Positions 3,820 through 35,761 of a stretch of 64,000 nucleotides of DNA are shown here, piece by piece. Every line of letters begins with the position of its first letter. Position 1 is the first letter of the stretch. The notes under the pieces are model-generated. The model was not told the DNA's origin. It did not search any database and was given only the letters and a program-made list of their open reading frames with translations. Position numbers and translations under genes: made by a program. The stretch is from positions 1 to 64,000 of IMG/VR virus record IMGVR_UViG_3300042895_001344; one strand, given 5' to 3'.

Positions 3820-3847
3820 AATATAATGAAAATATGTGAAAAATCAA
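3820..3847 (-). promoter_or_regulatory. Sigma70-like promoter TTGATT-N16-TATATT
   Basis: Lies 7 nt upstream of the ATG at 3812; the same architecture recurs at 6 other gene starts. Confidence 0.55.
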
Positions 3848-4656
3848 ATCAAATTTTGTTTATTTTTTGGTAAATAATTTATATAACTTGGGAAATTTTT
3901 TGATATAAAATCATGTAGTTTATTTGCATAGGTCTTATTATGGTTAGGCCCTGGATGTCCATTATCCACACCTAAATCTAAATATTTCCCATAATCACCA
4001 TCAAATCTGTTGAGTTCATTATGATCTATCGATGTTATTTCTCTAACATTCCAACCATTCCATACCCAATTACAATTTTTAGATTCTAAAAAATATTTTA
4101 TTAATAAATGATTTTTATACCAATTTACGGTATCCTCATTATAATTTTGTAAATAAGTTAAATATTCTTGTGTTTTAATACCATCATCAGTTTCTTTTAA
4201 ATAACCCCAAGAAGCCGTTGGCATGAACGGTTCAATACCACAATCTTTAGTATATATTTCTCTTCTTAAAGGTGAAGGATACATTATAAATATTAAATCA
4301 GGTTTTATTACATCATAATACGTTAATAAACATCTAACAATGAAATCATTACTTCTACCGCCAGCACCAAAATTAAAATTAACACCATTTGGTATCAATG
4401 ATGTGAATTGAGCTGGCCAAGTTTCATGATCATTAACCGCAACACCTTCGGTATTTGAACATCCAAATGACATAATTTTAAACCCTTCTCTTTTAATACT
4501 ATCACCTCTAAATCCTAATTCATTATATGTGTATGTACATAAACCTGTGTTGTCTGTACCTGATGTTTTAAATATTTTGTTTTTTCGTTCACCTAATTTA
4601 AACTTGTACGATGAGATTTCAAATTCATTAGGGTCCCAATATTTTAGTGGATTCAT
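3844..4656 (-). CDS. SGNH-like hydrolase/acyltransferase
   Basis: FGCSNTEG, GRSN and C-terminal DNGHPG match SGNH blocks I, II/III and V. Confidence 0.6.
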   Translation of the reverse strand: MNPLKYWDPNEFEISSYKFKLGERKNKIFKTSGTDNTGLCTYTYNELGFRGDSIKREGFKIMSFGCSNTEGVAVNDHETWPAQFTSLIPNGVNFNFGAGGRSNDFIVRCLLTYYDVIKPDLIFIMYPSPLRREIYTKDCGIEPFMPTASWGYLKETDDGIKTQEYLTYLQNYNEDTVNWYKNHLLIKYFLESKNCNWVWNGWNVREITSIDHNELNRFDGDYGKYLDLGVDNGHPGPNHNKTYANKLHDFISKNFPSYINYLPKNKQNLI

Positions 4657-5153
4657 ATTAATTTATTTGTTTCTATTTTTATATGTTCGTTTTCTAAAAA
4701 CCATAATAAAGAATATCGTACACCTTCTAAAATTGGTGTTATTTCATGGTCTATTCTTACATCAAATAAATATGTATTCCCAATAACTTTATCTAATGTA
4801 ATTTCATTTGGGTTATACAATTTAAAGTCACCTCCTTCAAAATCACCATTTAATAAAACTCCCACTGCATATAATCTATTATTTCTAATATCATTATGTT
4901 TTCCAAACCAATCACCTTTTACAAATTTATGAAAATGTATAACTTCTTTATTTTTTTTTATCCGTATGTTTGATTGTTCTTCAAAAAATGTTTTAAGTTT
5001 ATCAAACAACCATTTCGTTTCCAACGAATATGTAATTGATTGTGAATTATATTTTCTATCACTCATTATCCAATTTTTAATATGGGTGTCGTTATACGAT
5101 ATTATAGATTCACACTCCTCTTTATTAAATAAGACTTGTTCCTTTATTAACAT
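4653..5153 (-). CDS. 2OG-Fe(II) oxygenase (P4H/PKHD-like)
   Basis: HxD in WFGKHND, FEGGDF, distal H in HEITP, and RYSL. Confidence 0.8.
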   Translation of the reverse strand: MLIKEQVLFNKEECESIISYNDTHIKNWIMSDRKYNSQSITYSLETKWLFDKLKTFFEEQSNIRIKKNKEVIHFHKFVKGDWFGKHNDIRNNRLYAVGVLLNGDFEGGDFKLYNPNEITLDKVIGNTYLFDVRIDHEITPILEGVRYSLLWFLENEHIKIETNKLI

Positions 5154-5685
5154 TTATTCTATATTTTTCTCCGTAAGGAAAATTTTTATTTTCTAATTCA
5201 ACCATATTTAAATAATCTAATATTTTTTGAAAACCATTATTGTAATATAGTTCTTCATATGATATATTAAAATAATCTTTATTTAAATAATTTTCTTTTA
5301 ATCCGTTTTTGATTTGATTAAAATATGATACATCTCCGTCTTTTATTAAATTTTCTTTAAATACCCATGCTTTATCCCAATTATTTGTTTTATTAGCATT
5401 TAACCAAGATTCACTTTGTTCACTTATATTTTCTCTATATAAAATAATTACCTTATCTGATATTTCTATTAATTCTGAAAAATCTGTTTTAATATCATAT
5501 GTTTCTTTAATTAAAATGTGTGGTGTTTTATATTCCCACAATTTTGGTGATACACCATGTTTATACCACTTCCAATTTGGACTTGTTATGGGTTCAAATA
5601 ATGTGGTAAAATTTTTATTACTAAAAAACCAATTAGTTAAGTTGGTTGATCCACTTCGTGGTTCTGCTAGTATTGTTATAACCAT
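5125..5685 (-). CDS. Sulfotransferase-like protein (Stf0/P-loop type)
   Basis: 5'-PSB-like EPRSGSTNL followed by FEP; LYREN; YEEL. Confidence 0.65.
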   Translation of the reverse strand: MVITILAEPRSGSTNLTNWFFSNKNFTTLFEPITSPNWKWYKHGVSPKLWEYKTPHILIKETYDIKTDFSELIEISDKVIILYRENISEQSESWLNANKTNNWDKAWVFKENLIKDGDVSYFNQIKNGLKENYLNKDYFNISYEELYYNNGFQKILDYLNMVELENKNFPYGEKYRINVNKGTSLI

Positions 5686-6353: not shown

Positions 6354-6976
6354 ATTATACTTTTATTATTTTTAAAATCTACAATTGGTTCATCTATATT
6401 TAAAAGTTTATGTAGTTTAACATAAAAATCATGGCACCCTTTCCAACCTGGATGCCAATCTATTGGGTCACCTCCTTCATCTGCAATAGAAGTTACTTTT
6501 ATTAATTCTATAAACTCTTTTGTTTTTTCATAAAACTCATCGTTCCATGTTACAAATATTGGTTGGTGGTGGTTATAAAACATTTTTATTTTCTTAAGAA
6601 ATAAAATTTCATCGTCTCGTTCACCATTTAACCAACTATTTGTTTCTTTAATTCGTAATTCAAACAGTTTTTTTGCAAATAATTTATCCTTATACCATTC
6701 CCAATTTAAATATTTTGAATTATGATTTATTTCTCTTTCCCCAAAATATCTTCTTGGGAATCTTGATGGGGATGTAAAAACTATTATGATTCTATCACCA
6801 TTTGTATAATTTGGTATATTTCCTGTTTGGTATAATATAGAGTGATTATCAGCTCCAAATTTTCCAAATTTAATTACGTTATAATGATTGGATAGATAGT
6901 CCGTCCAATGCATTTTAGGTACTTCCCAATCAACAAAACTATCACCACAAATATATAAATTAGATTTTTGTTTCAT
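6350..6976 (-). CDS. SGNH-like protein
   Basis: CGDSF, GADN, DWHPG. Confidence 0.6.
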   Translation of the reverse strand: MKQKSNLYICGDSFVDWEVPKMHWTDYLSNHYNVIKFGKFGADNHSILYQTGNIPNYTNGDRIIIVFTSPSRFPRRYFGEREINHNSKYLNWEWYKDKLFAKKLFELRIKETNSWLNGERDDEILFLKKIKMFYNHHQPIFVTWNDEFYEKTKEFIELIKVTSIADEGGDPIDWHPGWKGCHDFYVKLHKLLNIDEPIVDFKNNKSII

Positions 6977-7659
6977 TACACTAATCTCATATTTTTGGTG
7001 AAGGGCTTTTCAAAAACATCCCAAACCCATTTTTTTAATTCATCATTAACTTCAATTTTATTTTTTATTTTTGATGTTCCATTCATTTTTTTAATTTTTA
7101 ATACTACACCAAATTTTTCATATATTAAATTTTTGAATTTATCTATTTCGGAAATATCAAATTCATAATCACATTTTGTGTTATCTGTCCAATAATTCTT
7201 ACATGCAAATATCGATAACGTATCGGGTAAGTTTTTATTTATTACATTAAAAAATTTACTATATTCTTTTTGTATTTTATATTCATTATCACAATATATT
7301 GCATCTGCTAAATTTTTATTAAAATATTCATAAATAAAGTTATTATCAATATCCGACCAATTATATTTTAATTCGTTTCTATGAAGATGATTTGATATTT
7401 CAAAAAAATATTCCAATGCACTATACCATCTGTCAAACCAATTTCTTGTGATACAACAAGTTTTTTGAAAACCAAATTCTTCTAATAAGAAGTTTTTTCT
7501 AAAATGAAAATGGTGGTTTGTATTTATATTGGGGTAGGGTTCTTTAGATGTTAGATTTATTTGTAATTGATTATTATTTTTTAATGAATCTTCTATTGAG
7601 ACAGACGCACATCTTGGAATTGAAACCCAAATAAGTTGATTGTTAATAAGAATTGACAT
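6976..7659 (-). CDS. Sulfotransferase family 2-like protein
   Basis: WVSIPRCAS (IPK/RxAS PAPS loop) and TRNWFDRWYS (3'-PB motif RxPxxRxxS). Confidence 0.65.
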   Translation of the reverse strand: MSILINNQLIWVSIPRCASVSIEDSLKNNNQLQINLTSKEPYPNINTNHHFHFRKNFLLEEFGFQKTCCITRNWFDRWYSALEYFFEISNHLHRNELKYNWSDIDNNFIYEYFNKNLADAIYCDNEYKIQKEYSKFFNVINKNLPDTLSIFACKNYWTDNTKCDYEFDISEIDKFKNLIYEKFGVVLKIKKMNGTSKIKNKIEVNDELKKWVWDVFEKPFTKNMRLV

Positions 7660-7943
7660 TAAATAATTTTTTCATTATTTAATTTTTTTGCAAAAAACAA
7701 CTTGTCAACTTCTTCCCATTTTCCAATCGGGCATGGATTGTTATTTTTAGAATAAATTTTTTTCATTAATGGACATCCACATAAATCACAAACTATACCT
7801 AATTTAAATTTTTTTATACGTTCTTTTTTGTGTTCACAAGAATTACAAATTTCTGAACGTTTTTGTGCAAGGGACGCTTCTGCGTCAGATGGGTTTGCTG
7901 CTGTTATCCATGCGGATACTATTTCTAATAAATCTAAACTCAT
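7659..7943 (-). CDS. Small Cys-rich putative metal-binding protein (DUF6171-like)
   Basis: Pattern R-x2-IC-x2-C...C-x2-CGC...CP-x2-KW. Confidence 0.55.
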   Translation of the reverse strand: MSLDLLEIVSAWITAANPSDAEASLAQKRSEICNSCEHKKERIKKFKLGIVCDLCGCPLMKKIYSKNNNPCPIGKWEEVDKLFFAKKLNNEKII

Positions 7944-7981: not shown

Positions 7982-8068
7982 TTAAGAATTTTCGTTAATA
8001 ATTAATGCACCGATTTGGGTCATTAAATTATTCATTTCTAATATTTCTTGTTCTGTTATTGTATTCAT
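7982..8068 (-). CDS. Putative 28-aa peptide MNTITEQEILEMNNLMTQIGALIINENS (not in the ORF track)
   Basis: ATG-to-TAA ORF fills the gap directly downstream of the ATP-grasp/Hint gene, on the same strand. Confidence 0.45.
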   Translation of the reverse strand: MNTITEQEILEMNNLMTQIGALIINENS

Positions 8069-8089: not shown

Positions 8090-9625
8090 TTAGAGTTGTA
8101 GACATCTATTTGAATAATATCCACAAGCACCTGTTGCCGAACAAACTTCATACATCTTATCACATCCACCAGACCCTACTCCAATTGAATTACATGGTGC
8201 ACAATATGAATTGTGTTCTACTGCGATATATGATGATACGGTTGCAGAATCACCATCTGTTATGGTTAGGAAAATATGTTCGTCTTGTACACCTATTATA
8301 TATCCACTTAATACTTCGGTTTCGTCTTGTATAGATATCACAGTTTTTTCATTAAATGAAATAGTATCATAATTACCAACATTTATTAATAATAATATAT
8401 CCCCTATTTGTAAATTTGATGTAGTTTGTGTGTTTATATCTTCCCCAATTGTTGCCCACATAACATTGTTATTTCTTTTTATTAAATAAACAGAATTTGA
8501 TGTATCTTTCCAATTTGTTTCGTCACTAAAGTTTAGTGTTGTTAATTTAACTGAAACATCAATTCTTTTTTTAAATGTTATTACATTGGTACTAAATGAT
8601 GAATTTGAAAGAAGTTCATTATAATCAACGTTATATGTCCTCAATTCGTTGGCCTCAGTTATGTTAGGTTGATTTTCATATAGTCTAATTGTTTTAACAG
8701 TATCACCAACCTGTAAATCTTGCCCTGTTTTAAAACTACCATCTGCCATTACAACTAAATCCGTATCAAGTAATTTAGGTTTCACCAACCTTTGTGTCCC
8801 TGTTAAGTATCCGTTTCTATCTACATTAGAAATTTGATGTGTTAGACTATCATATGAGTTGTCATTTAATTCTTGCATAACCTTTAAATTACCATATTTT
8901 TTGTATGCACAGATAGGAATCGATTCTAATGTTGGTGGGTATAAGATATTTAAGGAACGAATAATTGTAATACGTCCTTCGTTTAATTTTTCCTCATTAA
9001 ACAAATATTCCATTAAGAAATAATCTTCATTTACATTATTTGTAATAACTTCATTTAATTCTTCAATATTTGAAACTTTAAAAAATTTTGGGTATACTTC
9101 CCTATCATATATTGGAAATCTTGCTTTTAAAATAAAGTTTGGGTGTATACCATTATTAGGTATGGTCGTTATATTTGATATAACTTGTGAAGTTTCATCC
9201 ATATATGCAAACTTAAACCCAAAATTTTCATTCTGAAACAGTTTTAAAAAATTTACTTTATCTTTGCAGTAAGTTTCGTCAACGATTGCTGAAACATCGT
9301 AGGCACTTCTTACAATTAAGTGATTATCACTATCTTCAATATATGGAATTGTAATACCCCCTAAAGTTTCAATAAATTCATATTCTACCCCCAAATTAAC
9401 ACAAGCCTCATTAAATTTTTCACTTACTTGTGGAATTCCACCGATAAATGTGACCTTTACAAAATTGTTGTTTGATACAAAGCTTATAAATTGTGTCAAA
9501 TTTATGGCCCCCTCAGTCTCAGCCGCTAATCTCACATCCCAACCAATATTGGTGTTTATCTCAATTGGTCTTAAATCACCATTTGAATTGTATGCAAAAT
9601 CTGTCCCTAATAGCAATGTTCTCAT
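8090..9625 (-). CDS. Circularly permuted ATP-grasp-like domain + Hint domain + C-terminal Cys-rich peptide
   Basis: N-terminal TDF..G..RPIEINTN, FILKARFP and FLMEY. Hint-like LLDTDLVVMADGSFKTGQDLQVGDTV, GYIIGVQDEHIF and VEHN|S. Then a 39-aa tail with 6 Cys. Confidence 0.7.
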   Translation of the reverse strand: MRTLLLGTDFAYNSNGDLRPIEINTNIGWDVRLAAETEGAINLTQFISFVSNNNFVKVTFIGGIPQVSEKFNEACVNLGVEYEFIETLGGITIPYIEDSDNHLIVRSAYDVSAIVDETYCKDKVNFLKLFQNENFGFKFAYMDETSQVISNITTIPNNGIHPNFILKARFPIYDREVYPKFFKVSNIEELNEVITNNVNEDYFLMEYLFNEEKLNEGRITIIRSLNILYPPTLESIPICAYKKYGNLKVMQELNDNSYDSLTHQISNVDRNGYLTGTQRLVKPKLLDTDLVVMADGSFKTGQDLQVGDTVKTIRLYENQPNITEANELRTYNVDYNELLSNSSFSTNVITFKKRIDVSVKLTTLNFSDETNWKDTSNSVYLIKRNNNVMWATIGEDINTQTTSNLQIGDILLLINVGNYDTISFNEKTVISIQDETEVLSGYIIGVQDEHIFLTITDGDSATVSSYIAVEHNSYCAPCNSIGVGSGGCDKMYEVCSATGACGYYSNRCLQL

Positions 9626-12441: not shown

Positions 12442-12824
12442 TTATCATTCATATTAGGATATTCGATAATATCTCCGTTAGAGTCAATATACCCGTTTCT
12501 GATACTTGTACCACTAATTTTAGCAACATCTTCAGGTGGTTCGTGGTAAATAACATCATACCCAACCCCTCTACCATAATTGATACTTTCAATATCGGGA
12601 ATAATAGATATATTAATTTTATGTGAATTTTCCTTAAAAAACGGTTCGTCCGCCAAATCCATCATAACCTGTTGAGCGGTTTTTGGGTTATTCTCATCTG
12701 TCTCCACATTTCTAATGGCTACCCACACATTCTTTCCTTTCTCTAATTGTTGATTAAGTAACCACTCGTGACCCTTGTGCCAATTCTGCCATCTGCCCAC
12801 ATACATCGCATATTTTTTATTCAT
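12438..12824 (-). CDS. Small HxGH nucleotidyltransferase (cytidylyltransferase-like fold); possible minimal ATP sulfurylase
   Basis: GRWQNWHKGH, YGRGVG, ISGTSIR; translationally coupled to cysC. Confidence 0.7.
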   Translation of the reverse strand: MNKKYAMYVGRWQNWHKGHEWLLNQQLEKGKNVWVAIRNVETDENNPKTAQQVMMDLADEPFFKENSHKINISIIPDIESINYGRGVGYDVIYHEPPEDVAKISGTSIRNGYIDSNGDIIEYPNMNDK

Positions 12825-13258
12825 AGTGTTAATTTTTTTAATATTTCATAATAAGAATCTACTTCGGTTTTACCTGTTGTATCCAAATCTATAAAGTTTT
12901 CGGTCGGTGGTTCGTAGTTCTCCACATGAAACTGATTTCTACCTCTATCCTCTGTCGTGTGTACATAAACCTCAATAACGTCTTCTCTATTCTTAAAGTC
13001 CTCCCTTTGGTCTTTATATGGTGAAACTAAGGATACCAAGACCGTAAACCCCTTTTTATTCAAAAATTGAGCAATGTCTTGTGCTCTTTCAATATTTTTT
13101 CTCCTTCCCACCTCAGAATAGTCCTTATTTTGGAAGATATCCCTCAAATCGTCACCATCTATAATAATAGTGTTCTCCTTACCAAAATGGGTTAGGAGGT
13201 TGTTTACTAACGTAGTCTTACCTGATGCGGGTTGTCCGGTGAACCAATATATTGACAT
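12821..13258 (-). CDS. cysC: Adenylyl-sulfate (APS) kinase
   Basis: WFTGQPASGKTT P-loop, DGDDLR, VSLVSPY, YEPP. Confidence 0.85.
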   Translation of the reverse strand: MSIYWFTGQPASGKTTLVNNLLTHFGKENTIIIDGDDLRDIFQNKDYSEVGRRKNIERAQDIAQFLNKKGFTVLVSLVSPYKDQREDFKNREDVIEVYVHTTEDRGRNQFHVENYEPPTENFIDLDTTGKTEVDSYYEILKKLTL

Positions 13259-13416: not shown

Positions 13417-15084
13417 TTAATTTTTATACATAACATAATTACCCATTACTAATATATCCATATCAGTATCAAAGAAAGTATCGACAGCATCTTTTGGCGT
13501 TAATACCATTGTTTTATCTTTAACATTGAATGAGGTATTCAGTAAAATTGGATAACCACTTAATTTTTCAAATTCCCTTAATAAATCATGAATTACGGTG
13601 TATTTGTAAACTGTTTGAACTCTTGCACTACCATCTACGTGTGTAACCGCCAGTAGTTTATCACGATATTCTTCCTTTACTTTAACAACTTGATTCATAT
13701 ATGGAACATCGTCTGTCATCTCAAAGAATTGATCTTGTTTCTCTTTGGTTACCATTGGGGCAAATGGTCTAAAACCTTCTCTTTTCTTAATCACCTTATT
13801 AATTCTATCTTTCATATTAGGTAATGTTGGATTTGCTAATATTGATCTATTACCTAACGCCCTTGATCCAAATTCTATATGACCATTAAACCATCCAACA
13901 ACTTTACCTTCAAATAATTTTTGTGCAATATGTGTTCTTAATTTATTTTCAGATTCAAACTTTTTAAAGTTCTTGGTACCAATTGCATGTCTAATATCAT
14001 CTAAATAATATTCGGGACCTAAAAATGGATTTCTTGTAATTTTACTTCTTACTTTACGTTCTTTAACCAAATAATGAACCACAGCACCTATTGCCGACCC
14101 TGCGTCAGATGGTGCAGGTGGAATCCAAAGGTGTGTAAAATGTGATTTGTCTATAATCTTGCCATTCGCCGTTCCATTATATGCACATCCACCACTTAAT
14201 GTTAAGTTTGAACTTTTACTTACGTGTCTAATTGATTTGATAATTTCAAATAATACCTCTTCGTATCTTAATTGAACCGCTGCCGCCAAATCTTTGTGTG
14301 TTTGTTCCAATGTTTCTTCCGGTAATCTTTGTGGGACGCTTAATAGTTCCGCAAGTTTTTCGTTGAACATGGATTTATCGGTCTTATTCCAACAAAATAC
14401 ATCCATATTACACACCAACTTACCACTTTTAAATGAAATCAAATCACGTACCTCTTTAATATACTTTTGAGGGTCACCATAGGACGCCAATCCCATTACC
14501 TTATACTCACCTTCGTTCGGTCTAAACCCTAAATAAGAGGTTAATGCGGAGTAATAAAGACCCATTGAATGTGGATACTTTGCAACTGAACTGTACTTAA
14601 TTCCATTGTAATCGGCAACCCCTAACGACACCGTATCAATTTCACCTACACCGTCAACGGATAAACAAGTAGATTCCTCAAAATGAGACGTATAATGTGC
14701 ATAATACTGATGAGCCTCGTGATGTGTTGAATAAAATACCGTGGGACAAATCTCTTTTAATTTCTTATCAATTTCTTTTATGTTATTACGTATTTTCAAA
14801 TACGACTTTAACGAATATATGGGATTCTTAAACCATTGAGGTTTGATGTTTTTCATTACTCTTTGATACTTTAATTGGGGATCTTCGTAATAACAAACCG
14901 CCTGTAAGTTCTTAGGTGTAATCTTATATTGTTTATAGATATATTCCAACGCTTTGGTTGGAAACGAATCATCATGTTTAATACCTGTGAATTTTTCTTC
15001 CTCGCAAGCAAATATTAATTGGTTATCTCTGAATAAACAAACAGAGGAGTCATGATAAAATGCTGAAATTCCTATAATATACAT
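13417..15084 (-). CDS. O-carbamoyltransferase, NodU/CmcH family
   Basis: HDSS, HHEAH, GEYKVMGLASYG, GGCAYN, EFGSRALGNRSILA, FRPFAP, HVDGSARVQTV, LNTSFN. Confidence 0.92.
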   Translation of the reverse strand: MYIIGISAFYHDSSVCLFRDNQLIFACEEEKFTGIKHDDSFPTKALEYIYKQYKITPKNLQAVCYYEDPQLKYQRVMKNIKPQWFKNPIYSLKSYLKIRNNIKEIDKKLKEICPTVFYSTHHEAHQYYAHYTSHFEESTCLSVDGVGEIDTVSLGVADYNGIKYSSVAKYPHSMGLYYSALTSYLGFRPNEGEYKVMGLASYGDPQKYIKEVRDLISFKSGKLVCNMDVFCWNKTDKSMFNEKLAELLSVPQRLPEETLEQTHKDLAAAVQLRYEEVLFEIIKSIRHVSKSSNLTLSGGCAYNGTANGKIIDKSHFTHLWIPPAPSDAGSAIGAVVHYLVKERKVRSKITRNPFLGPEYYLDDIRHAIGTKNFKKFESENKLRTHIAQKLFEGKVVGWFNGHIEFGSRALGNRSILANPTLPNMKDRINKVIKKREGFRPFAPMVTKEKQDQFFEMTDDVPYMNQVVKVKEEYRDKLLAVTHVDGSARVQTVYKYTVIHDLLREFEKLSGYPILLNTSFNVKDKTMVLTPKDAVDTFFDTDMDILVMGNYVMYKN

Positions 15085-15087
15085 TCT

Positions 15088-15834
15088 CTACTTTTTAAAT
15101 AAAACCTTTTTTAATAATTCTGGTTCAATATATTTTATTGGGTAATGGACACCTAATGGGTTTGGTGAATAAACGTCTTCCATACTAAACCGTTTAGCGG
15201 TTTCAATATCTGCAACACCTCGACCTTTAAGATACTTCACAAAATAAATATCTTCCCAAATAACTTCTTTAATTTTATTCGTTACAGATATTTCTAACAT
15301 TACATTTCGAGTTCTTAATGATAATCCACCGTTACCCACATACGACCCTTCTTTGGGTTTTCTCCAAGGTGCTCCGATGTAATCATAATCTAAAAACTCG
15401 TCAATTCCACTCCTTAATAATATAGAATCCAGTTGAAAAGTAAAGACCTTGTCACCTTTTACTGTTTTCCAAAATTCAACATCTCTAAACAAGACATTAT
15501 ATTCTATTTTTGTTAGACTCGGCATTTCTAAATTAATAACAATTACCTCTCCCCAATCTTTTACCATATCTTTAATGTGCTCGTGATTATCACACCCACA
15601 AAAAATCTGTAATCCCCATTTAATATTGGAATCTGTCTCATTAAGATAATACATACAAGTTTTCATAGTGATATATAAATCTTCATGATGTCTCGGTTCA
15701 AGTGTCATTGCGTAATGAGTTGTCCCGCTTTTTATATTTGGGGTATACCACTCCAATTCCTTTTCCATATTTCTAAGATGCTCATTCCATATGGGAATGT
15801 TTATCTCGTTATATTTTTTTTCTAAGTTTTCCAT
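15088..15834 (-). CDS. DUF5672-family glycosyltransferase-like protein
   Basis: FQLDSILL, DYDYIGAPW, VGNGGLSLR, EDIYF, FSME. ATG at 15834 preferred over the TTG at 15849. Confidence 0.7.
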   Translation of the reverse strand: MENLEKKYNEINIPIWNEHLRNMEKELEWYTPNIKSGTTHYAMTLEPRHHEDLYITMKTCMYYLNETDSNIKWGLQIFCGCDNHEHIKDMVKDWGEVIVINLEMPSLTKIEYNVLFRDVEFWKTVKGDKVFTFQLDSILLRSGIDEFLDYDYIGAPWRKPKEGSYVGNGGLSLRTRNVMLEISVTNKIKEVIWEDIYFVKYLKGRGVADIETAKRFSMEDVYSPNPLGVHYPIKYIEPELLKKVLFKK

Positions 15835-16432
15835 ATATGTAATTAGCAATCACTTTATACCCATCTAAATTTGGGTGGTAGTCTCCTTCATAAAAATTCT
15901 TCTCATCGTTCCATACACTTCTACTCCCGTACTCCCAAACACCGACATCGTTCTTTATTTCATATTCTCGTAATATATCTGAAACGCATCCATCTGGATT
16001 TATAAAATACTCTGGTAATTTTTTTGTATCAACATCCTCTTCTCTAAACGACGGATAAAAAGAATTAAAGTAAAAATGTTTATATCCCTCCAATAATTCT
16101 TCCATTAATAGATATATTTCAACCACATTGTGAATGTCTTTTGATTTATAACGATATGGATAAGATAACATTATTATAACAACATCATCTTTATCGATAA
16201 ATCCGTTTTCAATCGTTTCTCTCAAATCTCTTAAAATATATTCATTACCATAACCACAAACACCTAAATTAATATATTCACATTTTAATTTATCTGAAAC
16301 CCATCTTGGCCATGAGTTCATGTCTCTTAATTTTTGTATGAACATGTGGGGAAATGGTTCTTCTTTATATTTTACGTCAGTTTCAACCCCGTGTCCGGCA
16401 GTCCAACTGTCACCAAATGTTATTAATCTCAT
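15809..16432 (-). CDS. SGNH-like protein
   Basis: FGDSWTAGHG, GYGN, DYHPN. Confidence 0.65.
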   Translation of the reverse strand: MRLITFGDSWTAGHGVETDVKYKEEPFPHMFIQKLRDMNSWPRWVSDKLKCEYINLGVCGYGNEYILRDLRETIENGFIDKDDVVIIMLSYPYRYKSKDIHNVVEIYLLMEELLEGYKHFYFNSFYPSFREEDVDTKKLPEYFINPDGCVSDILREYEIKNDVGVWEYGSRSVWNDEKNFYEGDYHPNLDGYKVIANYIYGKLRKKI

Positions 16433-17160
16433 TGTATATATTTTAAAAATAAATTTGCCAAGACCTCATGTCCTGAAGATGCCATATGATCGTCAATAAT
16501 AACCTCATTAGTTTCGTCTATTATTCGTAAACCACCATTTTCTTTTACGATTTCTTGATATGGTTTATCATATTTTAAAGTATTGGATAATAACCATCTA
16601 TTATTAATATCGTTAATTTCATCTATTTTATACTCAATAATTTTTTTATCTATCGTCCAATAATAAACACGTAATCCTATACTATCGGCAAGTTTATTGA
16701 TTAAAATTTGATACTTAAATAATTCTTCAATCCATAAAACATATGTTCTATTAACAAAAATAGATTCAATAACATTTTTATCATATTCAATTGGTATTTG
16801 ATTAGGTGTTATTGTTGTTATCCTATTAGTTTTATGATCCGCCCATTTAAATCTTTCCATGTGTGTCCATTCAATGATGACAATATCTCCCCTTTGGAAA
16901 TCTTTACTTGCCATACATATATTATTAAAAATTGAAAAGTTACAGTTTCCTTCCATTCCAGTTTTACCGGTTATACCATCTATTCCACCGTGATTTCTCA
17001 ATTTCATGTTTAATTGTTCAGACATAATCTGTGGCCAACTTTTTGGTATAATACCGTTATGATAATTCATGATATAATCGTAACGTGTTGTACCTGGATA
17101 TTTTATAAATGGATCAAAATTTTCAGTAAAACTACATCCAAACGTATATAATGTATTCAT
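16429..17160 (-). CDS. SGNH-like protein
   Basis: FGCSFTE, GNCN, DDHM. Confidence 0.6.
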   Translation of the reverse strand: MNTLYTFGCSFTENFDPFIKYPGTTRYDYIMNYHNGIIPKSWPQIMSEQLNMKLRNHGGIDGITGKTGMEGNCNFSIFNNICMASKDFQRGDIVIIEWTHMERFKWADHKTNRITTITPNQIPIEYDKNVIESIFVNRTYVLWIEELFKYQILINKLADSIGLRVYYWTIDKKIIEYKIDEINDINNRWLLSNTLKYDKPYQEIVKENGGLRIIDETNEVIIDDHMASSGHEVLANLFLKYIQ

Positions 17161-17912
17161 TATTTATTTAATATTTTTGAGTGTCTTTTTATGTGTTTAT
17201 AAAAATATTCCATTTGATTAATATGTCCATATTCTCCCATATGATCATCAATAACTTCGCCGTTTGTTTCTTCCACAATTCTCGCTTTTAAAAGTCCATC
17301 AAAAAATTTTGGTAAGTTTAAATAACCCATTAAACTTGTTTTAATGCTTTCAGGATCATCAATAACGATAAATCTTTCATCAATAAATTTACTATGTTGA
17401 TTAAATAAAGTGTCATCACTACACCAATGGTACACTTCAGCACCTTTTTCCTTAACGACCATGTTAATTAATTTAATCCAATCTAAAACTTCATTAATCC
17501 ATAATGGATGAGATCTGTTAACAATAATTTCTTCCAATGTAGTTTTAGAATAACCCGTGTCACTATAATTTGTGGCATTTGGTAATAGTTCAATGACTAT
17601 ATTCTCATTTAAATTAATTACAGGAAATCTAAGCATACTAGTCCAACCAAATATTAATATATCACCTTTTTTTATTAAGTCACACACATTAATATATTGT
17701 CTAAAAATACTATAATTTGATGATCCTCCGACACCACAATTCATGGTTTGATATTCAATTTTTTTACCCAATAATTCAGACCAAACTAACGGAAGTTTTC
17801 CACCCTTAAATTTCTTATACCGATCGTATTGATTTTCAAATGGATGATAAACACCTTCAATTGGATTATATTCAGCGGTAAAACTACATCCAAACGTCCA
17901 AAGTCTATTCAT
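17160..17912 (-). CDS. SGNH-like protein
   Basis: FGCSFTA, GSSN, DDHMG. Confidence 0.6.
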   Translation of the reverse strand: MNRLWTFGCSFTAEYNPIEGVYHPFENQYDRYKKFKGGKLPLVWSELLGKKIEYQTMNCGVGGSSNYSIFRQYINVCDLIKKGDILIFGWTSMLRFPVINLNENIVIELLPNATNYSDTGYSKTTLEEIIVNRSHPLWINEVLDWIKLINMVVKEKGAEVYHWCSDDTLFNQHSKFIDERFIVIDDPESIKTSLMGYLNLPKFFDGLLKARIVEETNGEVIDDHMGEYGHINQMEYFYKHIKRHSKILNK

Positions 17913-18510
17913 TATTAATATAATTTAAAAATACGTCAACCGCTTTATTGTGTCCATTTATACCTAAATGTGTGTCGGGAATTTTTCCCTCTGTTTCATC
18001 ATACATCGATAAACAATTATTTTGTTTTAATGTTTGATTGTTTAATTTATGATTTAATCTAAACTCTTCTCCTGACCAAAAATATACATTAAAATTTTTA
18101 GATTTGGAAAATGTTTTAATTAAATTTTCCCAACTATATATTTCCTCAACCCATTTATCTTGATTTCTATCAGATATAATTTCATTATCAACACCATTTA
18201 AGTTAGGGTATACATTTTGAAACTCATTGTTTTTAACTTTTCTAAATTTAGAAACCAATCCCCAACCAATTATAACAATATCTTTTTCGTTAATTAAATG
18301 CGACACATCACAAAAATCTTGAAATATTTGATAATTGGAACTACCTGCAATTGCTAAATTTTTAATGTTTGAATTTAATTTTTCCGCCAATAGGTTTGGC
18401 CACGATACAATTTCTAATTGTTCCACCATATTAAGATATTGTCTATGATTATCACTTAAATCTTTTATATTGGCAGTAAAGCTATCTCCAAATGTCCAAA
18501 GTGTTCTCAT
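17905..18510 (-). CDS. SGNH-like protein
   Basis: FGDSFTA, GSSN, DTHLG. Confidence 0.6.
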   Translation of the reverse strand: MRTLWTFGDSFTANIKDLSDNHRQYLNMVEQLEIVSWPNLLAEKLNSNIKNLAIAGSSNYQIFQDFCDVSHLINEKDIVIIGWGLVSKFRKVKNNEFQNVYPNLNGVDNEIISDRNQDKWVEEIYSWENLIKTFSKSKNFNVYFWSGEEFRLNHKLNNQTLKQNNCLSMYDETEGKIPDTHLGINGHNKAVDVFLNYINNE

Positions 18511-33027: not shown

Positions 33028-34313
33028 TAAATTAAATTTTTAATTTTATTTGTATGATTACAATAATTTTTTAAATTGGTATACGCTTCAGGTAATTTAA
33101 ATAATTTACCAACCAATACTGATTGATTATATTTTATAATTTCTTCCATAGAAGAAAACCATTTTAATTTATCTTGAATATCATCAACTTTTTTAATTGA
33201 CTCAATAATATATTGTAACCTTTCATGTGTCGGTAAATGATCATATCCCTCATCTATAAAACCATCAAATGTTTTATATCCAATTTTTTTCATCATTTCC
33301 ATACTATCCTTATTCCCCATTATAATAAATGGACTATTACATGCAATAACTTTAAATGTTTTTTCACTTAAAAACATGGTTTCGTCACTATCACCACAAT
33401 GAGCTTCACTAATAACCGTCATAAATGTATCTAATGAAATTTGATTATTGAATCTTCTAATATAGAAATTATCATCAAATTCATCGTTACTTTTTTCATG
33501 TACTAAAAGTGGTAATCCAACTAATATTTCGTCTATACGTTCTTTACTTATTTCTTGTCCTTCAAATATATAACCATGTTTATCGAATGAGTTCATACTA
33601 ACTAATCCCTTGTTAATTAATCCCGCTTGATGTAAGTAATTATAAAACCAAACTCTTTGTAATCTAATTCTTTTATTTAAACAAGCGAAAGTTTTAATAT
33701 GAGATATATTTTCTGTTTTATGTGTGATGTGATCTTCAAATGTTGGTAATGGGTGGTTATCTCTGATTTTTTCATAACACATCATCCCCATATCTAATTC
33801 AAAATGTGAATATGGTATAACTTTAATCTTTTCAATTACATCATTGTCTTTTGTCCATTTTTCATATGTTTCATCGGCAATCATATTACCAGTAACATAA
33901 ATGATACGTGTTGGTGAAACATTCCATTCTTTACATTCTTTATGAAACCACTCCCATAACCAAGGTGTTTGATACCCCTCTAAACTTTGATCCAACATAA
34001 CATAAGCTTTATTATTTCTTAAGTCAGTTAGATATTTTTCATTAAGATAAAAGAAAAAACTTTTAACCCTAGGGTCATACCCTGTCCAATCATCGGGACT
34101 ATGGTTTACTGATGTTGGGATTATATACTCTTCATCAATTATTTCATCTACCGAATAATAATTTAACTCTCCATTAATATTTGATAATTGGCAATTAATG
34201 TTTGTTGCGGTTAATAATGGTGATATACCAAACCTATTAATCCCTGATCTATTAATATCTTTACAGGAAGTAAAATTAGCCAGATTAAACTTATCTTCAA
34301 AAACAAAATTCAT
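33027..34313 (-). CDS. GT10-like family putative glycosyltransferase
   Basis: LNKRIRLQR and TVISEA..LSEKTFKVI..PFIIMG..GYD. Confidence 0.45.
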   Translation of the reverse strand: MNFVFEDKFNLANFTSCKDINRSGINRFGISPLLTATNINCQLSNINGELNYYSVDEIIDEEYIIPTSVNHSPDDWTGYDPRVKSFFFYLNEKYLTDLRNNKAYVMLDQSLEGYQTPWLWEWFHKECKEWNVSPTRIIYVTGNMIADETYEKWTKDNDVIEKIKVIPYSHFELDMGMMCYEKIRDNHPLPTFEDHITHKTENISHIKTFACLNKRIRLQRVWFYNYLHQAGLINKGLVSMNSFDKHGYIFEGQEISKERIDEILVGLPLLVHEKSNDEFDDNFYIRRFNNQISLDTFMTVISEAHCGDSDETMFLSEKTFKVIACNSPFIIMGNKDSMEMMKKIGYKTFDGFIDEGYDHLPTHERLQYIIESIKKVDDIQDKLKWFSSMEEIIKYNQSVLVGKLFKLPEAYTNLKNYCNHTNKIKNLI

Positions 34314-35761
34314 TATTTATTGTAATTTTCTTTATCTGACACATAAACTCCAGGTTCATAGTGTGTTATTCTACCATCAGTAATTTTTACATCTTGTATT
34401 GTGTTGTCAATCACTAATGAATTATACCAATCTTCTAACTCAGGGAATGTCTCCACGAAATTCTTGTTTCTACGAATATCATATTGAACATAGAAGCTTT
34501 TAAAGTCATGATATTGTATTGACATGTCCATTTCACTTGTATTATGACCTCTATTAACAACTTCAATATAATCAATCAATCTTTGAATTTGAGCACCTTC
34601 ATGCATATTGATTAACGGATTCTTTTTATGTTTTCTCCACCACATTGATAACTTACCGTGTAAATCGTGTTTAATATCGTCCGGTAATGTAAGTGGTGAC
34701 ATAAACGCCGGCCATCTTAAAATGTTAAAGTCAACAATTGGTTTATGTGTTCCGTATTTCTCTTTTAATTTCAACATATCATCTAAAAATTCAGTAATAC
34801 TAAATAAACACAAACTATTAATTGTCATCATAATAACAACTTGTCTAATTTTAGCACTCTCAATTACTTTAACTAAATTACTTCTCCATAGTTCATAATT
34901 TAAACCATCCCTAATATATTCCGCTTGCTCACCATAAGCTTCACAACTTGTATACAAATCGAATTCTTTGATGTCTAATTCGTGAGATATACTAATTAAC
35001 CTATTCACCGTCGTTTCGTTAAGACCTAGGTTAGAATTGACTGCAAGTCGTAAATTAGGGGACGGATATTGTTTCATTGTATCCATGAACTGCCAAAAAT
35101 TACGAGATTGTGATGGTTCTCCACCAGTTACACGTATTTCCATTAATTTTTGTGACAATTCAGGCCACCATTTTAAGAAAGCATCAACATATGGATTGTT
35201 CTCATTGTATTTACCGTAAATCTCAGACCAAGATCCGTCAGCATAATATGCCCCCGCACTTGTTGTTTTAAATTTCTGATATGGACCATTATCTTTAATG
35301 TCTTTACCCCATGTTGTTGAGTATCCTGAATTACAATATGAACAAGCAAAATTACATGTTCTATCAAAAGATACCTCGATAGTCTGTGGTACAATATCCG
35401 CATCCCAAGGTAGTTCTTTTAATGCCGCAATATCTTCAGAACTATAAATTTGACTTTTATATATACGATCCGAAATATTATTTCTACCGATATCTTCAAT
35501 CTTCCAACAGTAAGAACATTCCGCCGGTTTAACACCTTCTAACATCATTTTACGAATTTCTTTCTTAAAATCAGTATTATGTAATGCTGCTGGATTTGTT
35601 TTTATTGCTTCAACATCAATGGGATGTGGTAATGGTAAATGACACGAGTTTGTAAATCCATGACCTAAGTGTAAACTAACATTTAACCATTTAGCCGCAC
35701 AAAAACTACAACTTACTTTATTTAAATGTTCATCTCTCCAGTTTGCTAATTGTTCTGACAT
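34313..35761 (-). CDS. Twitch-domain radical SAM protein
   Basis: CAAKW, SCH, CSYCW, CNFACSYC, TGGEP. Confidence 0.85.
   Translation of the reverse strand: MSEQLANWRDEHLNKVSCSFCAAKWLNVSLHLGHGFTNSCHLPLPHPIDVEAIKTNPAALHNTDFKKEIRKMMLEGVKPAECSYCWKIEDIGRNNISDRIYKSQIYSSEDIAALKELPWDADIVPQTIEVSFDRTCNFACSYCNSGYSTTWGKDIKDNGPYQKFKTTSAGAYYADGSWSEIYGKYNENNPYVDAFLKWWPELSQKLMEIRVTGGEPSQSRNFWQFMDTMKQYPSPNLRLAVNSNLGLNETTVNRLISISHELDIKEFDLYTSCEAYGEQAEYIRDGLNYELWRSNLVKVIESAKIRQVVIMMTINSLCLFSITEFLDDMLKLKEKYGTHKPIVDFNILRWPAFMSPLTLPDDIKHDLHGKLSMWWRKHKKNPLINMHEGAQIQRLIDYIEVVNRGHNTSEMDMSIQYHDFKSFYVQYDIRRNKNFVETFPELEDWYNSLVIDNTIQDVKITDGRITHYEPGVYVSDKENYNK

What the first reader, a model, noticed from the sequence alone, without database searches (positions are those of the whole stretch)
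8090..9625. ATP-grasp + cleavage-only Hint + six-Cys peptide: candidate self-releasing peptide (RiPP-like) system in a phage
Seen in sequence: residues ~1-283 put the D-F..IEINTN motif at the very N-terminus, with the K (FILKARFP) and MEY elements later. Residues ~284-472 read as a Hint domain ending VEH471-N472|S473. The tail is SYCAPCNSIGVGSGGCDKMYEVCSATGACGYYSNRCLQL (39 aa, 6 Cys, nt 8093-8209). Established: that motif order is typical of circularly permuted ATP-grasp ligases (glutathionylspermidine synthase and eukaryotic GSH synthetase type). In inteins, residue 1 Cys/Ser and the block B TxxH drive N-terminal cleavage, while block F His and block G His-Asn drive C-terminal Asn cyclisation. 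Here residue 1 is Lys284 and block B reads T375-S-N-S, but H450 and H471-N472 are kept. Inference: the protein cannot splice, yet can autocleave to free a disulfide- or metal-binding peptide with a new N-terminal Ser. Its own ATP-grasp domain could then cyclise the peptide or ligate it to an acceptor. Five neighbouring 2OG oxygenases, three sulfotransferase-like genes and cysC could tailor it. I do not recognise this architecture as a described system.
Basis: partly seen in the sequence, partly recalled or inferred. Interest (0 to 1): 0.92.

Follow-up and report, generated by a model that had tools for sequence, protein, structure and literature searches.

The report
Self-cleaving phage ligase releasing cysteine-rich peptide
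A large, previously undescribed family of proteins from uncultured big phages fuses an ATP-using ligase to a self-cutting (intein-like) domain that most likely snips off a fast-evolving, disulfide-rich mini-peptide, a new way for a virus to make and perhaps modify a peptide product.

Summary
The 511-aa ORF (window 8090-9625, minus strand) has three parts.

- **Ligase:** an N-terminal, circularly permuted ATP-grasp ligase. Its best fold matches are eukaryotic glutathione synthetases.
- **Hint domain:** its best fold match is a bacterial-intein-like domain. It lacks the N-terminal nucleophile and the block-B His but keeps the C-terminal His-Asn.
- **Tail:** a 39-aa tail with six Cys.

In 171 homologs, x-His-Asn is invariant and the +1 residue is almost never a nucleophile. 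The tail is hypervariable, and its Cys count is even in 98.8%.

A wider, phage-only superfamily (300 clusters at 50% identity) keeps the ATP-grasp-Hint pair but swaps the cargo. In some members the Cys-rich peptide is also bracketed downstream by a second self-cleaving domain, either a Cys1 intein-like domain or Peptidase_S74. This argues strongly that the cargo is released.

The role of the ATP-grasp domain is unresolved, and the neighbouring enzymes look as much glycan-directed as peptide-directed. There is no literature precedent, no homolog in cultured phages and none in cellular genomes. I rate the interest high. Cleavage and ligation still need biochemical testing.

The parts
8090..9625 (-). 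Whole ORF, 511 aa: ATP-grasp, then Hint, then Cys-rich tail (stop codon at 8090-8092).
   Evidence: ORF listing. More than 615 full-length homolog clusters. omega is 0.16-0.18 in the enzyme domains.
8780..9625 (-). Residues 1-282: circularly permuted ATP-grasp ligase domain. Residues ~274-282 form a disordered linker.
   Evidence: AF2 model pLDDT 87.4. Foldseek PDB top hits are yeast glutathione synthase 1m0t (E 4.6e-5, prob 1.0), 5oev and 3kak, followed by ArgX/LysX. D9, E22, N24, R106, D116, K167 and R223 are invariant in 116-118 of 118 representatives.
8210..8776 (-). Residues 284-472: Hint domain. It lacks the position-1 nucleophile (K284) and the block-B His (S378) and ends in H471-N472.
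   Evidence: Foldseek PDB top hits are BIL2 6y75 (E 1.1e-7, TM 0.70 on target), inteins, hedgehog 1at0 and the Clostridium thermocellum (Cth) bacterial intein-like domain 2lwy. HN is present in 171/171 close homologs and in 110 (H) and 114 (N) of 118 representatives.
8093..8209 (-). Residues 473-511: hypervariable 39-aa, six-Cys cargo peptide with a central C-x-K motif.
   Evidence: Cys count is even in 98.8% of 171 tails. Lys is present in 171/171 tails. There are 93 Cys-spacing patterns. dN is 0.40, against 0.11 in the body. No Pfam family matches.
7982..8068 (-). Conserved 28-aa micro-ORF, 21 nt after the target's stop codon, with an invariant ...G-x-L-I...N-S C-terminus.
   Evidence: Translation. 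Present in 69/70 loci, with 42 unique sequences and omega 0.39. Analogous small ORFs lie beside the divergent architectures.
7659..7943 (-). c4: 94-aa Zn-ribbon-like protein with six conserved Cys (CxxC...CxxCxC...C).
   Evidence: Adjacent in 59/70 loci. Alignment A5. Weak matches to the TFIIB and DC1 zinc ribbons. HMM hits lie beside the S74 and BACON variants.
6976..7659 (-). c3: 227-aa sulfotransferase-like protein.
   Evidence: Present in 58/70 loci. The profile aligns the 5'-PSB and 3'-PB motifs to heparan-sulfate 2-O-sulfotransferase 4ndz at E 0.02. HMM hits lie beside the double-Hint and S74 variants.

Best explanation
The gene encodes an autoprocessing precursor that also carries its own enzyme.

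**Step 1 (inferred, well supported).** The Hint domain cannot start splicing, so it performs only the last intein step. Asn472, assisted by His471 (and His450 in this clade), cyclises to a succinimide. This breaks the N472|S473 bond and frees the 39-aa tail with a new alpha-amine.

**Step 2 (inferred from even Cys parity).** The tail folds into a mini-protein with three disulfides once it reaches an oxidising environment, that is, at or after lysis or on the virion. Its loops evolve fast while the Cys skeleton and a central Lys are kept.

**Step 3 (inferred, weakest).** The fused ATP-grasp domain is catalytically intact and never occurs without the Hint. It uses ATP to form an acyl-phosphate on a conserved carboxylate substrate and joins that substrate to an amine of the cargo. 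The most economical acceptor is the alpha-amine that the Hint has just unmasked beside it, because a new N-terminus is the only chemical feature shared by all cargo types. The universal cargo Lys is the alternative acceptor.

The conserved 28-aa micro-peptide (invariant C-terminal Asn-Ser), the Zn-ribbon protein c4 and the sulfotransferase-like c3 are co-inherited partners of this reaction or of later maturation.
For: **Fold and residues.**
- Hint fold: E 1e-7, and all top 50 PDB hits are BIL domains, inteins or hedgehog.
- The ATP-grasp fold resembles the permuted glutathione synthetases.
- The Mg/ATP triad D9...E22-x-N24, K167, and R106, D116, R223 are invariant in 116-118 of 118 representatives at <=50% identity.
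- H471 is kept in 110/118 and N472 in 114/118, while position 1 is never Cys or Ser and block B has no His.
- The residue roles are as described in PMC4031507.
- The +1 residue is a nucleophile in only 17 of 171, so splicing is excluded.

**Evidence that the cargo is released.**
- Cargo after HN is hypervariable and modular: short Cys tails (67/118), a Cys-rich peptide plus a second Cys1 intein-like domain (Pfam Intein_splicing 41-58 bits, above threshold), a Cys-rich segment plus a Peptidase_S74 self-cleaving chaperone, and 700-1240-aa BACON proteins.
- Bracketing of the same kind of peptide by two self-cleaving junctions is hard to explain unless the peptide is excised.

**Disulfides.** Cys count is even in 169/171 close homologs and 67/67 superfamily tails, across 93 spacing patterns.

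**Coupling of ligase and Hint.**
- In all 150 listed of the 300 exhaustive HMMER hits the ATP-grasp domain lies at the N-terminus.
- My Hint profile detects a Hint directly after it in most full-length members but not in about 30 of them.
- The apparent ATP-grasp-only proteins examined were artefacts.

**Partners.**
- Micro-ORF in 69/70 loci with omega 0.39.
- c4 in 59/70 loci and c3 in 58/70.
- Both persist next to relatives only 27% identical.
- The module is duplicated as a unit on one contig.
Against: - There is no experimental evidence of cleavage or ligation.
- Inteins usually slow Asn cyclisation until the branched intermediate forms (PMC4031507). A Hint without step 1 must have lost that brake, and this is unproven.
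- The block-F His (H450) is Asp in half of the superfamily.
- The tail is modelled with pLDDT below 50 and matches no known peptide family.
- Disulfides cannot form in the host cytoplasm.
- Nothing identifies the ATP-grasp substrates. The termini of the tail are not conserved.
- The ATP-grasp domain is kept even where a second Hint could activate the peptide's C-terminus.
- The surrounding enzymes look glycan-directed, so the ligase may act on something other than the cargo.
- Tail omega is 0.31-0.45, not above 1, and tail dS is also raised. The hypervariability may therefore reflect cassette exchange and relaxed constraint rather than diversifying selection.
Confidence: 0.6

Rival explanations
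1. Polyprotein, or unrelated enzyme. The Hint only separates two co-translated products. The ATP-grasp domain is a small-molecule or glycan ligase working for the surrounding sugar-decorating island, for example amidating a uronic acid. It has no chemical business with the cargo.
For: - The island encodes NodH-like and HS-2-O-sulfotransferase-like proteins, a NolO-like carbamoyltransferase, an APS kinase and glycosyltransferases.
- Related loci also encode a nucleotide-sugar epimerase and UDP-glucose dehydrogenase.
- The ATP-grasp substrate-binding residues are invariant while the cargo is hypervariable, which fits a constant small substrate.
Against: - The ATP-grasp domain was never found as a genuine stand-alone protein among the 150 listed of 300 clusters, and the short forms I examined were artefacts.
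- A Hint was detected directly after it in most full-length members.
- No relative exists in about 186,000 cellular genomes, where a useful metabolic ligase would be expected.
- The BACON-cargo variant sits beside the tail sheath, outside the island, yet keeps the ligase, c4 and a micro-ORF.
Confidence: 0.2
2. No cleavage. The Hint is a degenerate structural domain, and the Cys-rich tail is a permanent metal-binding (Zn or Fe-S) or redox module of the enzyme.
For: - Three of the five canonical intein catalytic positions are lost.
- The tail is Cys-rich, and the adjacent c4 protein is Zn-ribbon-like.
- There are no cleavage data.
Against: - HN is the one Hint feature kept across the superfamily.
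- A metal site would conserve ligand spacing, yet there are 93 spacing patterns, 4-12 Cys and tail lengths of 21-68 aa.
- Cargo can be a 1,240-aa BACON protein, or a peptide followed by a second self-cleaving domain.
Confidence: 0.1
3. Polymorphic-toxin-like weapon. The released peptide is an antibacterial or anti-competitor toxin, and the conserved small neighbours (micro-ORF, c4) are immunity or chaperone factors. The ATP-grasp domain replaces the trafficking domain. This rival concerns the role of the product and is compatible with step 1 of the best explanation.
For: - A Hint directly upstream of a polymorphic C-terminal cargo is the PT-HINT logic of polymorphic toxins. There is a weak PT-HINT hit on a relative (21.3 bits) and PT-HINT hits on second Hints.
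- The tail evolves fast and its dS is raised, suggesting cassette exchange.
- Cargo type changed at least 32 times on the tree of 118 representatives.
Against: - Immunity genes normally co-vary with their toxin. Here c4 (mean column identity 51%) and the micro-ORF are conserved while tails are not.
- The other cargo types (BACON, S74-chaperoned segments) and a position beside the tail sheath point to virion or adhesion modules.
- The tails match no toxin family.
Confidence: 0.15

Closest known systems
Pretoxin Hint (PT-HINT) domains of bacterial polymorphic toxins
   Same: A Hint domain lies immediately upstream of a hypervariable, exchangeable C-terminal cargo that it is thought to release by autoproteolysis. 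PT-HINT gives weak or partial Pfam matches on relatives.
   Different: - Here the N-terminal partner is an ATP-grasp ligase, not a secretion or trafficking domain.
- The host is a phage.
- The cargo is mostly a 21-68-aa disulfide-rich peptide.
- There is no co-varying immunity gene.
- The window protein itself does not hit the PT-HINT model.
Type A bacterial intein-like (BIL) domains and the Tetrahymena BUBL BIL2 domain (PDB 6y75)
   Same: - Best structural match.
- C-terminal His-Asn without a +1 nucleophile.
- Cleavage dominates over splicing (PMC4031507).
- BIL2 dispenses its flanking domain onto lysines (PMC8616854).
- The second Hint of the double-Hint relatives (Cys1 ... VHN followed by a Lys-rich stub) looks like a true type A BIL.
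   Different: - The window's Hint has Lys, not Cys, at position 1 and Ser instead of the block-B His. It therefore cannot form the N-terminal thioester that BILs use.
- BILs are not fused to ligases.
Eukaryotic glutathione synthetase (circularly permuted ATP-grasp; PDB 1m0t, 3kak)
   Same: - Best fold match (E 4.6e-5, probability 1.0).
- Same permuted order, with the Mg-binding D...E-x-N strands ahead of the ATP-binding Lys.
- An I-E-I-N-T motif resembles the one I recall in human GSS (from memory).
   Different: - No sequence-level family membership.
- TM-score is only 0.42 on the query.
- The domain is about 280 aa, against about 470 aa.
- The substrate is unknown.
LysW-LysX/ArgX amino-group carrier system
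   Same: - Second group of fold matches (3vpb, 5k2m).
- An ATP-grasp ligase joins the C-terminal carboxylate of a small partner protein to an amine. This is a possible analogy for the conserved micro-peptide with its invariant C-terminus.
   Different: - The match E-values are only about 0.01-0.1.
- LysW is a Zn-ribbon protein with an acidic C-terminus (from memory). Here the Zn-ribbon protein (c4) has a basic C-terminus, and the micro-peptide ends in Asn-Ser.
- No link to Lys or Arg biosynthesis.
Enzyme-core-peptide fusions among RiPPs (borosins such as OphMA) and graspetides
   Same: - Borosins: the modifying enzyme and its substrate peptide are one polypeptide, with the peptide at the C-terminus (from memory).
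- Graspetides: an ATP-grasp enzyme acts on a ribosomal peptide.
   Different: - Borosins need an external protease.
- Graspetide ligases are non-permuted, act on separate leader-containing precursors and need Asp/Glu plus Ser/Thr/Lys. By contrast, 29 of 171 tails here have no acidic residue.
- A survey of graspetide systems mentions no Hint, intein, phage or permuted ligase.

Membership tests
ATP-grasp superfamily, circularly permuted (eukaryotic glutathione-synthetase type) | ATP-grasp fold | tested here: met
   The AF2 model (pLDDT 87.4) matches 1m0t, 5oev and 3kak at E 5e-5 to 3e-4 with probability >=0.99, then LysX/ArgX and PurK. TM on the query is only 0.38-0.42.
ATP-grasp superfamily, circularly permuted (eukaryotic glutathione-synthetase type) | Mg/ATP-binding residues: acidic residue, then E-x-N 13 residues later, plus the nucleotide-binding Lys | tested here: met
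   D9 is kept in 116/118, E22 in 118/118, N24 in 118/118 and K167 in 117/118. Mapping to DdlB D257/E270/N272 is from memory.
ATP-grasp superfamily, circularly permuted (eukaryotic glutathione-synthetase type) | Permuted order, with the E-x-N strands N-terminal to the Lys and hinge elements | tested here: met
   The sequence order is D9, then E22-x-N24, then K167, then M205-E-Y. The best fold hits are the permuted synthetases.
ATP-grasp superfamily, circularly permuted (eukaryotic glutathione-synthetase type) | Sequence-profile membership of a curated ATP-grasp or GSH-synthetase family | tested here: not met
   There is no Pfam, NCBIfam, PHROG or PDB sequence hit for the protein or its profile. 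One member gave ATPgrasp_YheCD at E 0.003.
ATP-grasp superfamily, circularly permuted (eukaryotic glutathione-synthetase type) | ATP-dependent carboxylate-amine ligation | not testable with these tools
   Needs an enzyme assay.
Intein (class 1 protein splicing element) | Hint fold | tested here: met
   All top 50 Foldseek PDB hits are Hint domains.
Intein (class 1 protein splicing element) | Cys/Ser/Thr at position 1 | tested here: not met
   K284 is invariant in the close family. Across the superfamily the position is H/L/K/I and never Cys or Ser.
Intein (class 1 protein splicing element) | Block B T-x-x-H | tested here: not met
   The His position is S378 (S 59, T 18, A 15, N 10 of 118).
Intein (class 1 protein splicing element) | C-terminal His-Asn | tested here: met
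   171/171 in the close family. H 110/118 and N 114/118 across the superfamily.
Intein (class 1 protein splicing element) | Cys/Ser/Thr at +1 of the C-extein | tested here: not met
   The +1 residue is Y42, A28, V23, G14, S12, L12, F11 and others. There is no Cys, and S/T account for 17 of 171.
Type A bacterial intein-like (BIL) domain | C-terminal His-Asn, no +1 nucleophile required, cleavage products dominate | tested here: met
   with the definition from PMC4031507. Cleavage itself was not tested.
Type A bacterial intein-like (BIL) domain | N-terminal Cys that forms a thioester | tested here: not met
   K284. The second Hint of the double-Hint relatives does meet this feature.
Polymorphic toxin with PT-HINT releasing domain | Hint directly upstream of a polymorphic C-terminal cargo | tested here: met
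Polymorphic toxin with PT-HINT releasing domain | Match to the PT-HINT profile | tested here: inconclusive
   No hit for the window protein. 21.3 bits (cut-off 27.7) on relative P0318.
Polymorphic toxin with PT-HINT releasing domain | N-terminal secretion or trafficking domain, and a co-varying immunity gene | tested here: not met
   The N-terminus is an ATP-grasp domain. The downstream small genes are conserved and do not co-vary.
Graspetide-type RiPP | Separate leader-core precursor, graspetide-clade ATP-grasp, and Asp/Glu to Ser/Thr/Lys cross-link motif | tested here: not met
   The peptide is fused to the enzyme. The ligase resembles GSH synthetase and LysX, not the graspetide ATP-grasp ligases MdnB/MdnC. 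29 of 171 tails lack any Asp or Glu. Whether the micro-ORF is a precursor is open.

The most novel reading that the evidence does not exclude
This would be an ATP-driven protein-ligation (tagging) machine. The Hint unmasks an alpha-amine on a hypervariable cargo. The fused ATP-grasp domain then immediately joins that amine, or the universal cargo Lys, to a conserved carboxylate.

There are two versions.
- **Exchange:** the carboxylate is the invariant Asn-Ser C-terminus of the 28-aa micro-peptide, or a virion protein. The 472-aa enzyme would then be exchanged for a short conserved handle, or the cargo would be fixed covalently to the particle.
- **Cyclisation:** the carboxylate is the cargo's own C-terminus, giving backbone- or Lys-cyclised, cystine-knotted peptides comparable to cyclotides.

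Either way it would be a new enzymology of peptide maturation, encoded only by phages.
Probability: 0.2. Interest if true: 0.95.

Novelty: new variant of a known kind. Interest (0 to 1): 0.85.

Why it matters
- **New protein chemistry.** It would add a new biosynthetic logic: an enzyme, its substrate peptide and the releasing protease in one chain, with an intein relative reduced to a single-turnover C-terminal cutter.
- **Phage biology.** It points to an abundant class of fast-evolving, disulfide-rich peptides made by large aquatic phages. Their role (virion decoration or adhesion, competition, or signalling) is unknown.
- **Scale.** The family is large: more than 600 clusters at 90% identity and 300 at 50%. 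It is absent from cultured phages and from about 186,000 cellular genomes, so a sizeable piece of viral dark matter would gain a testable function.
- **Tools.** A self-cleaving, nucleophile-free Hint that tolerates almost any +1 residue, paired with a tethered ligase, could be useful for traceless peptide release or ligation.

Tried and rejected
- **Sequence searches.** Pfam, PHROGs, NCBIfam and PDB, with the single sequence and with profiles, gave no significant family for the protein or either domain. Only fold comparison worked.
- **Cultured phages.** tblastn against 50,697 phage records with four different superfamily members found nothing.
- **Cellular genomes.** A GTDB species-genome scan found no relative. 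The scan is pattern-based and could miss distant ones.
- **Viral fold library.** BFVD holds no relative of the ATP-grasp domain.
- **Stand-alone ligases.** A domain-only word search was saturated by full-length members. The 270-290-aa hits were a frameshifted assembly (L081) and a chimeric contig (L082), so they are not natural ATP-grasp-only proteins.
- **Tails against Pfam.** No Cys-rich peptide or toxin family matched.
- **Expression signals.** The promoter and terminator scan was not above the shuffled expectation.
- **Positive selection.** Pooled tail omega is 0.31-0.45, so omega above 1 is not shown. Raised tail dS points to recombination or alignment noise, and some of the 19 pairs are near-duplicates.
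- **K284-E470-N472 isopeptide triad.** Considered, but K284 and E470 are not conserved in the superfamily.
- **Diversity-generating retroelement.** Considered as the source of tail variation. It seems unlikely because tails vary in length and Cys number. I did not search for a reverse transcriptase.
- **Large cargos.** P0323 and P0236 gave no hit against PDB.
- **Literature.** No paper combines ATP-grasp with Hint or intein-like domains in a fused system.
Full report
**1. Observation**

The window carries a 511-aa ORF on the minus strand at 8090-9625.
- D9-F10 and I-E22-I-N24-T-N at the extreme N-terminus.
- F-I-L-K167-A-R and M-E206-Y further on.
- P283-K284.
- D374-T-S-N-S378.
- H450.
- V-E-H471-N472, followed by a 39-residue tail with six Cys (nt 8093-8209).

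The window is a low-GC (about 28%) phage fragment:
- It is 100% identical, over the target gene, to a 217-kb IMG/VR contig (L001).
- It carries collagen-like tail-fibre genes.
- Relatives lie on contigs of up to 335 kb, some next to a tail-sheath gene.

**2. A real, large, unannotated family**

Single-sequence and profile searches against Pfam, PHROGs, NCBIfam and PDB sequences gave nothing significant. Even so:
- The protein has more than 615 full-length homolog clusters (90% level) in metagenomes, all labelled hypothetical.
- It has 240 loci on viral contigs.
- None occurs in 50,697 cultured-phage records.
- None occurs in a pattern-based scan of 185,579 species genomes.

**3. Domain identities**

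I built per-domain alignments from 38 non-redundant loci (A2, A3) and predicted the structures.

The N-domain:
- The model has pLDDT 87.4.
- It best matches yeast glutathione synthase, a nematode GS-like effector and soybean homoglutathione synthetase (E 5e-5 to 3e-4, probability >=0.99).
- The next matches are the LysX/ArgX and PurK ATP-grasp enzymes.
- TM-scores are modest (about 0.4 on the query), so this is fold-level kinship, not family membership.

The C-terminal part:
- The Hint core has pLDDT about 85-93 and the tail is below 50.
- It matches only Hint-superfamily structures.
- The best is the Tetrahymena BUBL BIL2 domain (E 1.1e-7, TM 0.70 on the target).
- Inteins, hedgehog and a Clostridium BIL follow.

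**4. Which catalytic residues survive**

In 171 unique close homologs:
- The junction is x-H-N in 171/171.
- The residue after it is Y, A, V, G, S, L, F and others. It is never Cys, and it is Ser or Thr in only 17.

An exhaustive HMMER search of 1.84 billion representatives with the ATP-grasp profile found 300 clusters. In 118 full-length ones, mutually at most 50% identical:
- D9, E22, N24, R106, D116, K167 and R223 are present in 116-118.
- H471 is present in 110 and N472 in 114.
- Hint position 1 is H, L, K or I and never Cys or Ser.
- The block-B His position is S, T, A or N.

According to the intein literature (PMC4031507):
- Cys/Ser at position 1, block-B Thr/His and the +1 nucleophile drive steps 1, 2 and 4 of splicing.
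- The terminal Asn, with the penultimate His and the block-F His, drives step 3, which is C-terminal cleavage.

This domain therefore cannot splice, and it has kept exactly the residues for Asn cyclisation. K284 and E470, invariant in the close family, are not conserved in the superfamily.

**5. The tail**

- Tails are 23-62 aa long (median 38).
- Composition is 18% Cys, 12% Gly and 8% each Pro and Tyr. The body has 0.5% Cys.
- Cys number is 6 or 8 in 160 of 171 and even in 169 of 171. It is even in 67/67 short tails across the superfamily.
- There are 93 different Cys spacings.
- This pattern argues for disulfide pairing and against a fixed metal site.
- Every tail contains Lys (171/171 and 67/67), usually in a central C-x-K.
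- The tail diverges faster than the enzyme. Identity is 0.60 against 0.84, and 0.77 against 0.92.
- dN is 0.40 in the tail against 0.11 in the body.
- Tail dS is also raised and omega is 0.31-0.45. I therefore claim hypervariability, possibly through cassette exchange, and not proven positive selection.

**6. The superfamily shows the cargo is a separable product**

After the ATP-grasp-Hint pair the cargo varies:
- 67 of 118 representatives have short Cys tails.
- About 15 have longer Cys-rich segments.
- Six have 540-1,240-aa cargo. Two of the three I scanned carry BACON domains, and one of those genes abuts a tail sheath.
- Six have a 70-88-aa Cys-rich segment (6-12 Cys) followed by a Peptidase_S74 intramolecular-chaperone domain. 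That domain self-cleaves in phage fibres (its role is stated from memory).
- Twelve have a second Hint.

In seven members of the second-Hint group:
- A 27-35-aa peptide with 6 or 8 Cys lies between the first Hint's H-N and a canonical Cys-Phe/Leu intein start.
- The second domain passes the Pfam Intein_splicing threshold in the two best cases (41-58 bits).
- It ends in V-H-N followed by a 1-13-aa Lys-rich stub.

These bracketed peptides contain no Lys themselves. A type-A-BIL-like reaction would append the Lys stub, so Lys downstream of the last H-N is universal.

Cargo type follows the ATP-grasp tree only loosely. There are 32 changes, against 48.6 +/- 1.4 for shuffled labels, using a crude classification.

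**7. Conserved partners**

Clustering ORFs from 70 loci shows the following:
- A 94-aa six-Cys protein (c4) lies next to the gene in 59 loci.
- A 227-aa protein (c3) lies next to the gene in 58 loci.
- c4 resembles zinc ribbons weakly.
- c3 aligns its 5'-PSB and 3'-PB PAPS-binding motifs with heparan-sulfate 2-O-sulfotransferase (E 0.02).

Lowering the ORF threshold exposed a micro-ORF of 24-30 codons, 16-62 nt after the target's stop codon:
- It is present in 69 of 70 loci.
- G(-9), L(-7), N(-2) and S(-1) are invariant, and omega is 0.39.
- In the window it is 7982-8068, minus strand.

The association holds at 27% identity:
- c3 follows the double-Hint and S74 variants.
- c4 follows the S74 and BACON variants.
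- Small ORFs flank all three.
- One 211-kb contig carries two divergent copies of the target-c4-c3 module.

**8. The wider island**

- Upstream and downstream genes include two or three Pfam-supported 2OG-Fe(II) oxygenases plus two by cluster membership.
- There is also an Asp/Asn-hydroxylase-like protein, an APS kinase, a small nucleotidyltransferase-like protein, a carbamoyltransferase, a radical SAM enzyme and a glycosyltransferase-methyltransferase.
- Cyano- and pelagiphages also carry the carbamoyltransferase, where it is annotated as Nol-like.
- The c6 family's only PDB match is the NodH sulfotransferase. The match is weak, but both PAPS-binding motifs align.
- One relative adds a tryptophan halogenase and a UDP-glucose dehydrogenase.

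The evidence does not decide between the two.

**9. Mechanism and comparison**

The best-supported reading has three layers:
- A single-turnover Asn-cyclisation cut releases a disulfide-rich cargo. I put this at about 0.7.
- A fused, active ATP-grasp ligase has chemistry coupled to the cargo. The likeliest acceptor is the newly exposed alpha-amine, because a new N-terminus is the only feature common to all cargo types. The universal Lys is the alternative. I put this at about 0.4.
- The micro-peptide, c4 and c3 act as partners.

The closest known things are:
- PT-HINT release of polymorphic toxin domains.
- Type A BIL and BUBL domains.
- Permuted glutathione synthetases.
- The LysW-LysX carrier-ligase pair.
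- Enzyme-core fusions in borosin RiPPs.

It is a member of none. Intein, BIL-A, PT-HINT-toxin and graspetide membership each fail at least one defining feature that I tested. No paper in the searchable library describes the architecture.

**10. Verdict**

- The functional story is only partly supported, both for the ATP-grasp acting on the peptide and for the neighbours tailoring it.
- It is an undescribed, phage-restricted variant of Hint-mediated cargo release, coupled to a ligase.
- It is of high interest, and it is directly testable with simple expression, mutation and mass spectrometry.

Noticed in passing
window 7982-8068 (-): A conserved 28-aa micro-ORF lies 21 nt after the target's stop codon. 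It is present in 69/70 related loci, with an invariant ...G-x-L-I...N-S C-terminus and omega 0.39.
   Followed up: partly
window 7659-7943 (-) and 6976-7659 (-): A Zn-ribbon-like six-Cys protein (c4; the family has 840 unannotated clusters) and a sulfotransferase-like protein (c3) are syntenic with the target. The synteny holds even next to relatives only 27% identical. One contig carries two divergent copies of the whole module (L006 and L027).
   Followed up: partly
P0254, P0287, P0325, P0307, P0273, P0306 (L083:8001-9959): Double-Hint relatives have the order ATP-grasp, Hint (HN), Cys-rich peptide of 27-35 aa, canonical Cys1 mini-intein-like domain (VHN), Lys-rich stub. Other members have two or three tandem Hints separated by 2-8-aa spacers (P0342, P0358, P0359, P0317).
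   Followed up: partly
P0242, P0251, P0260, P0264, P0281, P0285 (L085:1423-3366): In these relatives a 70-88-aa Cys-rich segment (6-12 Cys) after the Hint is followed by a Peptidase_S74 intramolecular-chaperone self-cleaving domain. That domain is typical of phage fibres and spikes.
   Followed up: partly
L086:150-5153 and L086:5150-5404: A 1,667-aa member carries BACON-domain cargo and sits directly upstream of the tail-sheath gene. An uncalled c4 homolog lies just downstream (E 2e-22), and a 30-aa ORF lies just upstream.
   Followed up: partly
window 5125-5685 (-), 12821-13258 (-), 13417-15084 (-): A NodH-like sulfotransferase candidate (c6), an APS kinase and a NolO/NodU-like carbamoyltransferase occur together. 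The combination is reminiscent of Nod-factor-type glycan decoration. It raises the possibility that the island modifies sugars rather than the peptide.
   Followed up: partly
L083:10813-12357: A flavin-dependent tryptophan-halogenase homolog and a radical SAM gene lie just downstream of the double-Hint variant, whose peptide is rich in Trp and Tyr.
   Followed up: no
tail region of the family (e.g. window 8093-8209): Synonymous divergence in the tail (dS 1.29) is about twice that of the rest of the gene (0.59-0.75). This suggests recombinational exchange of tail cassettes, or alignment noise.
   Followed up: no
P0342, P0325, P0243 second Hint domains; window residues 283-325: The Pfam AXH (ataxin-1/HBP1) model scores strongly on the canonical second Hint domains (up to 79.9 bits). 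PDB ataxin-1 AXH chains weakly match the block-A region of the window's Hint. This cross-match between AXH and Hint N-terminal halves is unexplained.
   Followed up: no
window 15809-18510 (-) and 3844-4656 (-): Four tandem paralogs plus one dispersed copy of a 200-270-aa family (c1) are present, and the family is multi-copy in most related loci. One member gives a sub-threshold GDSL/SGNH hydrolase hit. The function is unknown.
   Followed up: no
window 50165-53692 (-) and 59371-62982 (-): Two large collagen-like tail-fibre genes are present. A second radical SAM gene lies at 34313-35761, and a plus-strand block with a nucleotide-sugar epimerase lies at 22.4-30.6 kb, where the GC skew flips.
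   Followed up: no
L081:2615-4134: One metagenomic copy is split by a frameshift in the inter-domain linker. The Hint and tail continue in another frame. This is probably an assembly error or a pseudogene, not a natural two-gene form.
   Followed up: yes
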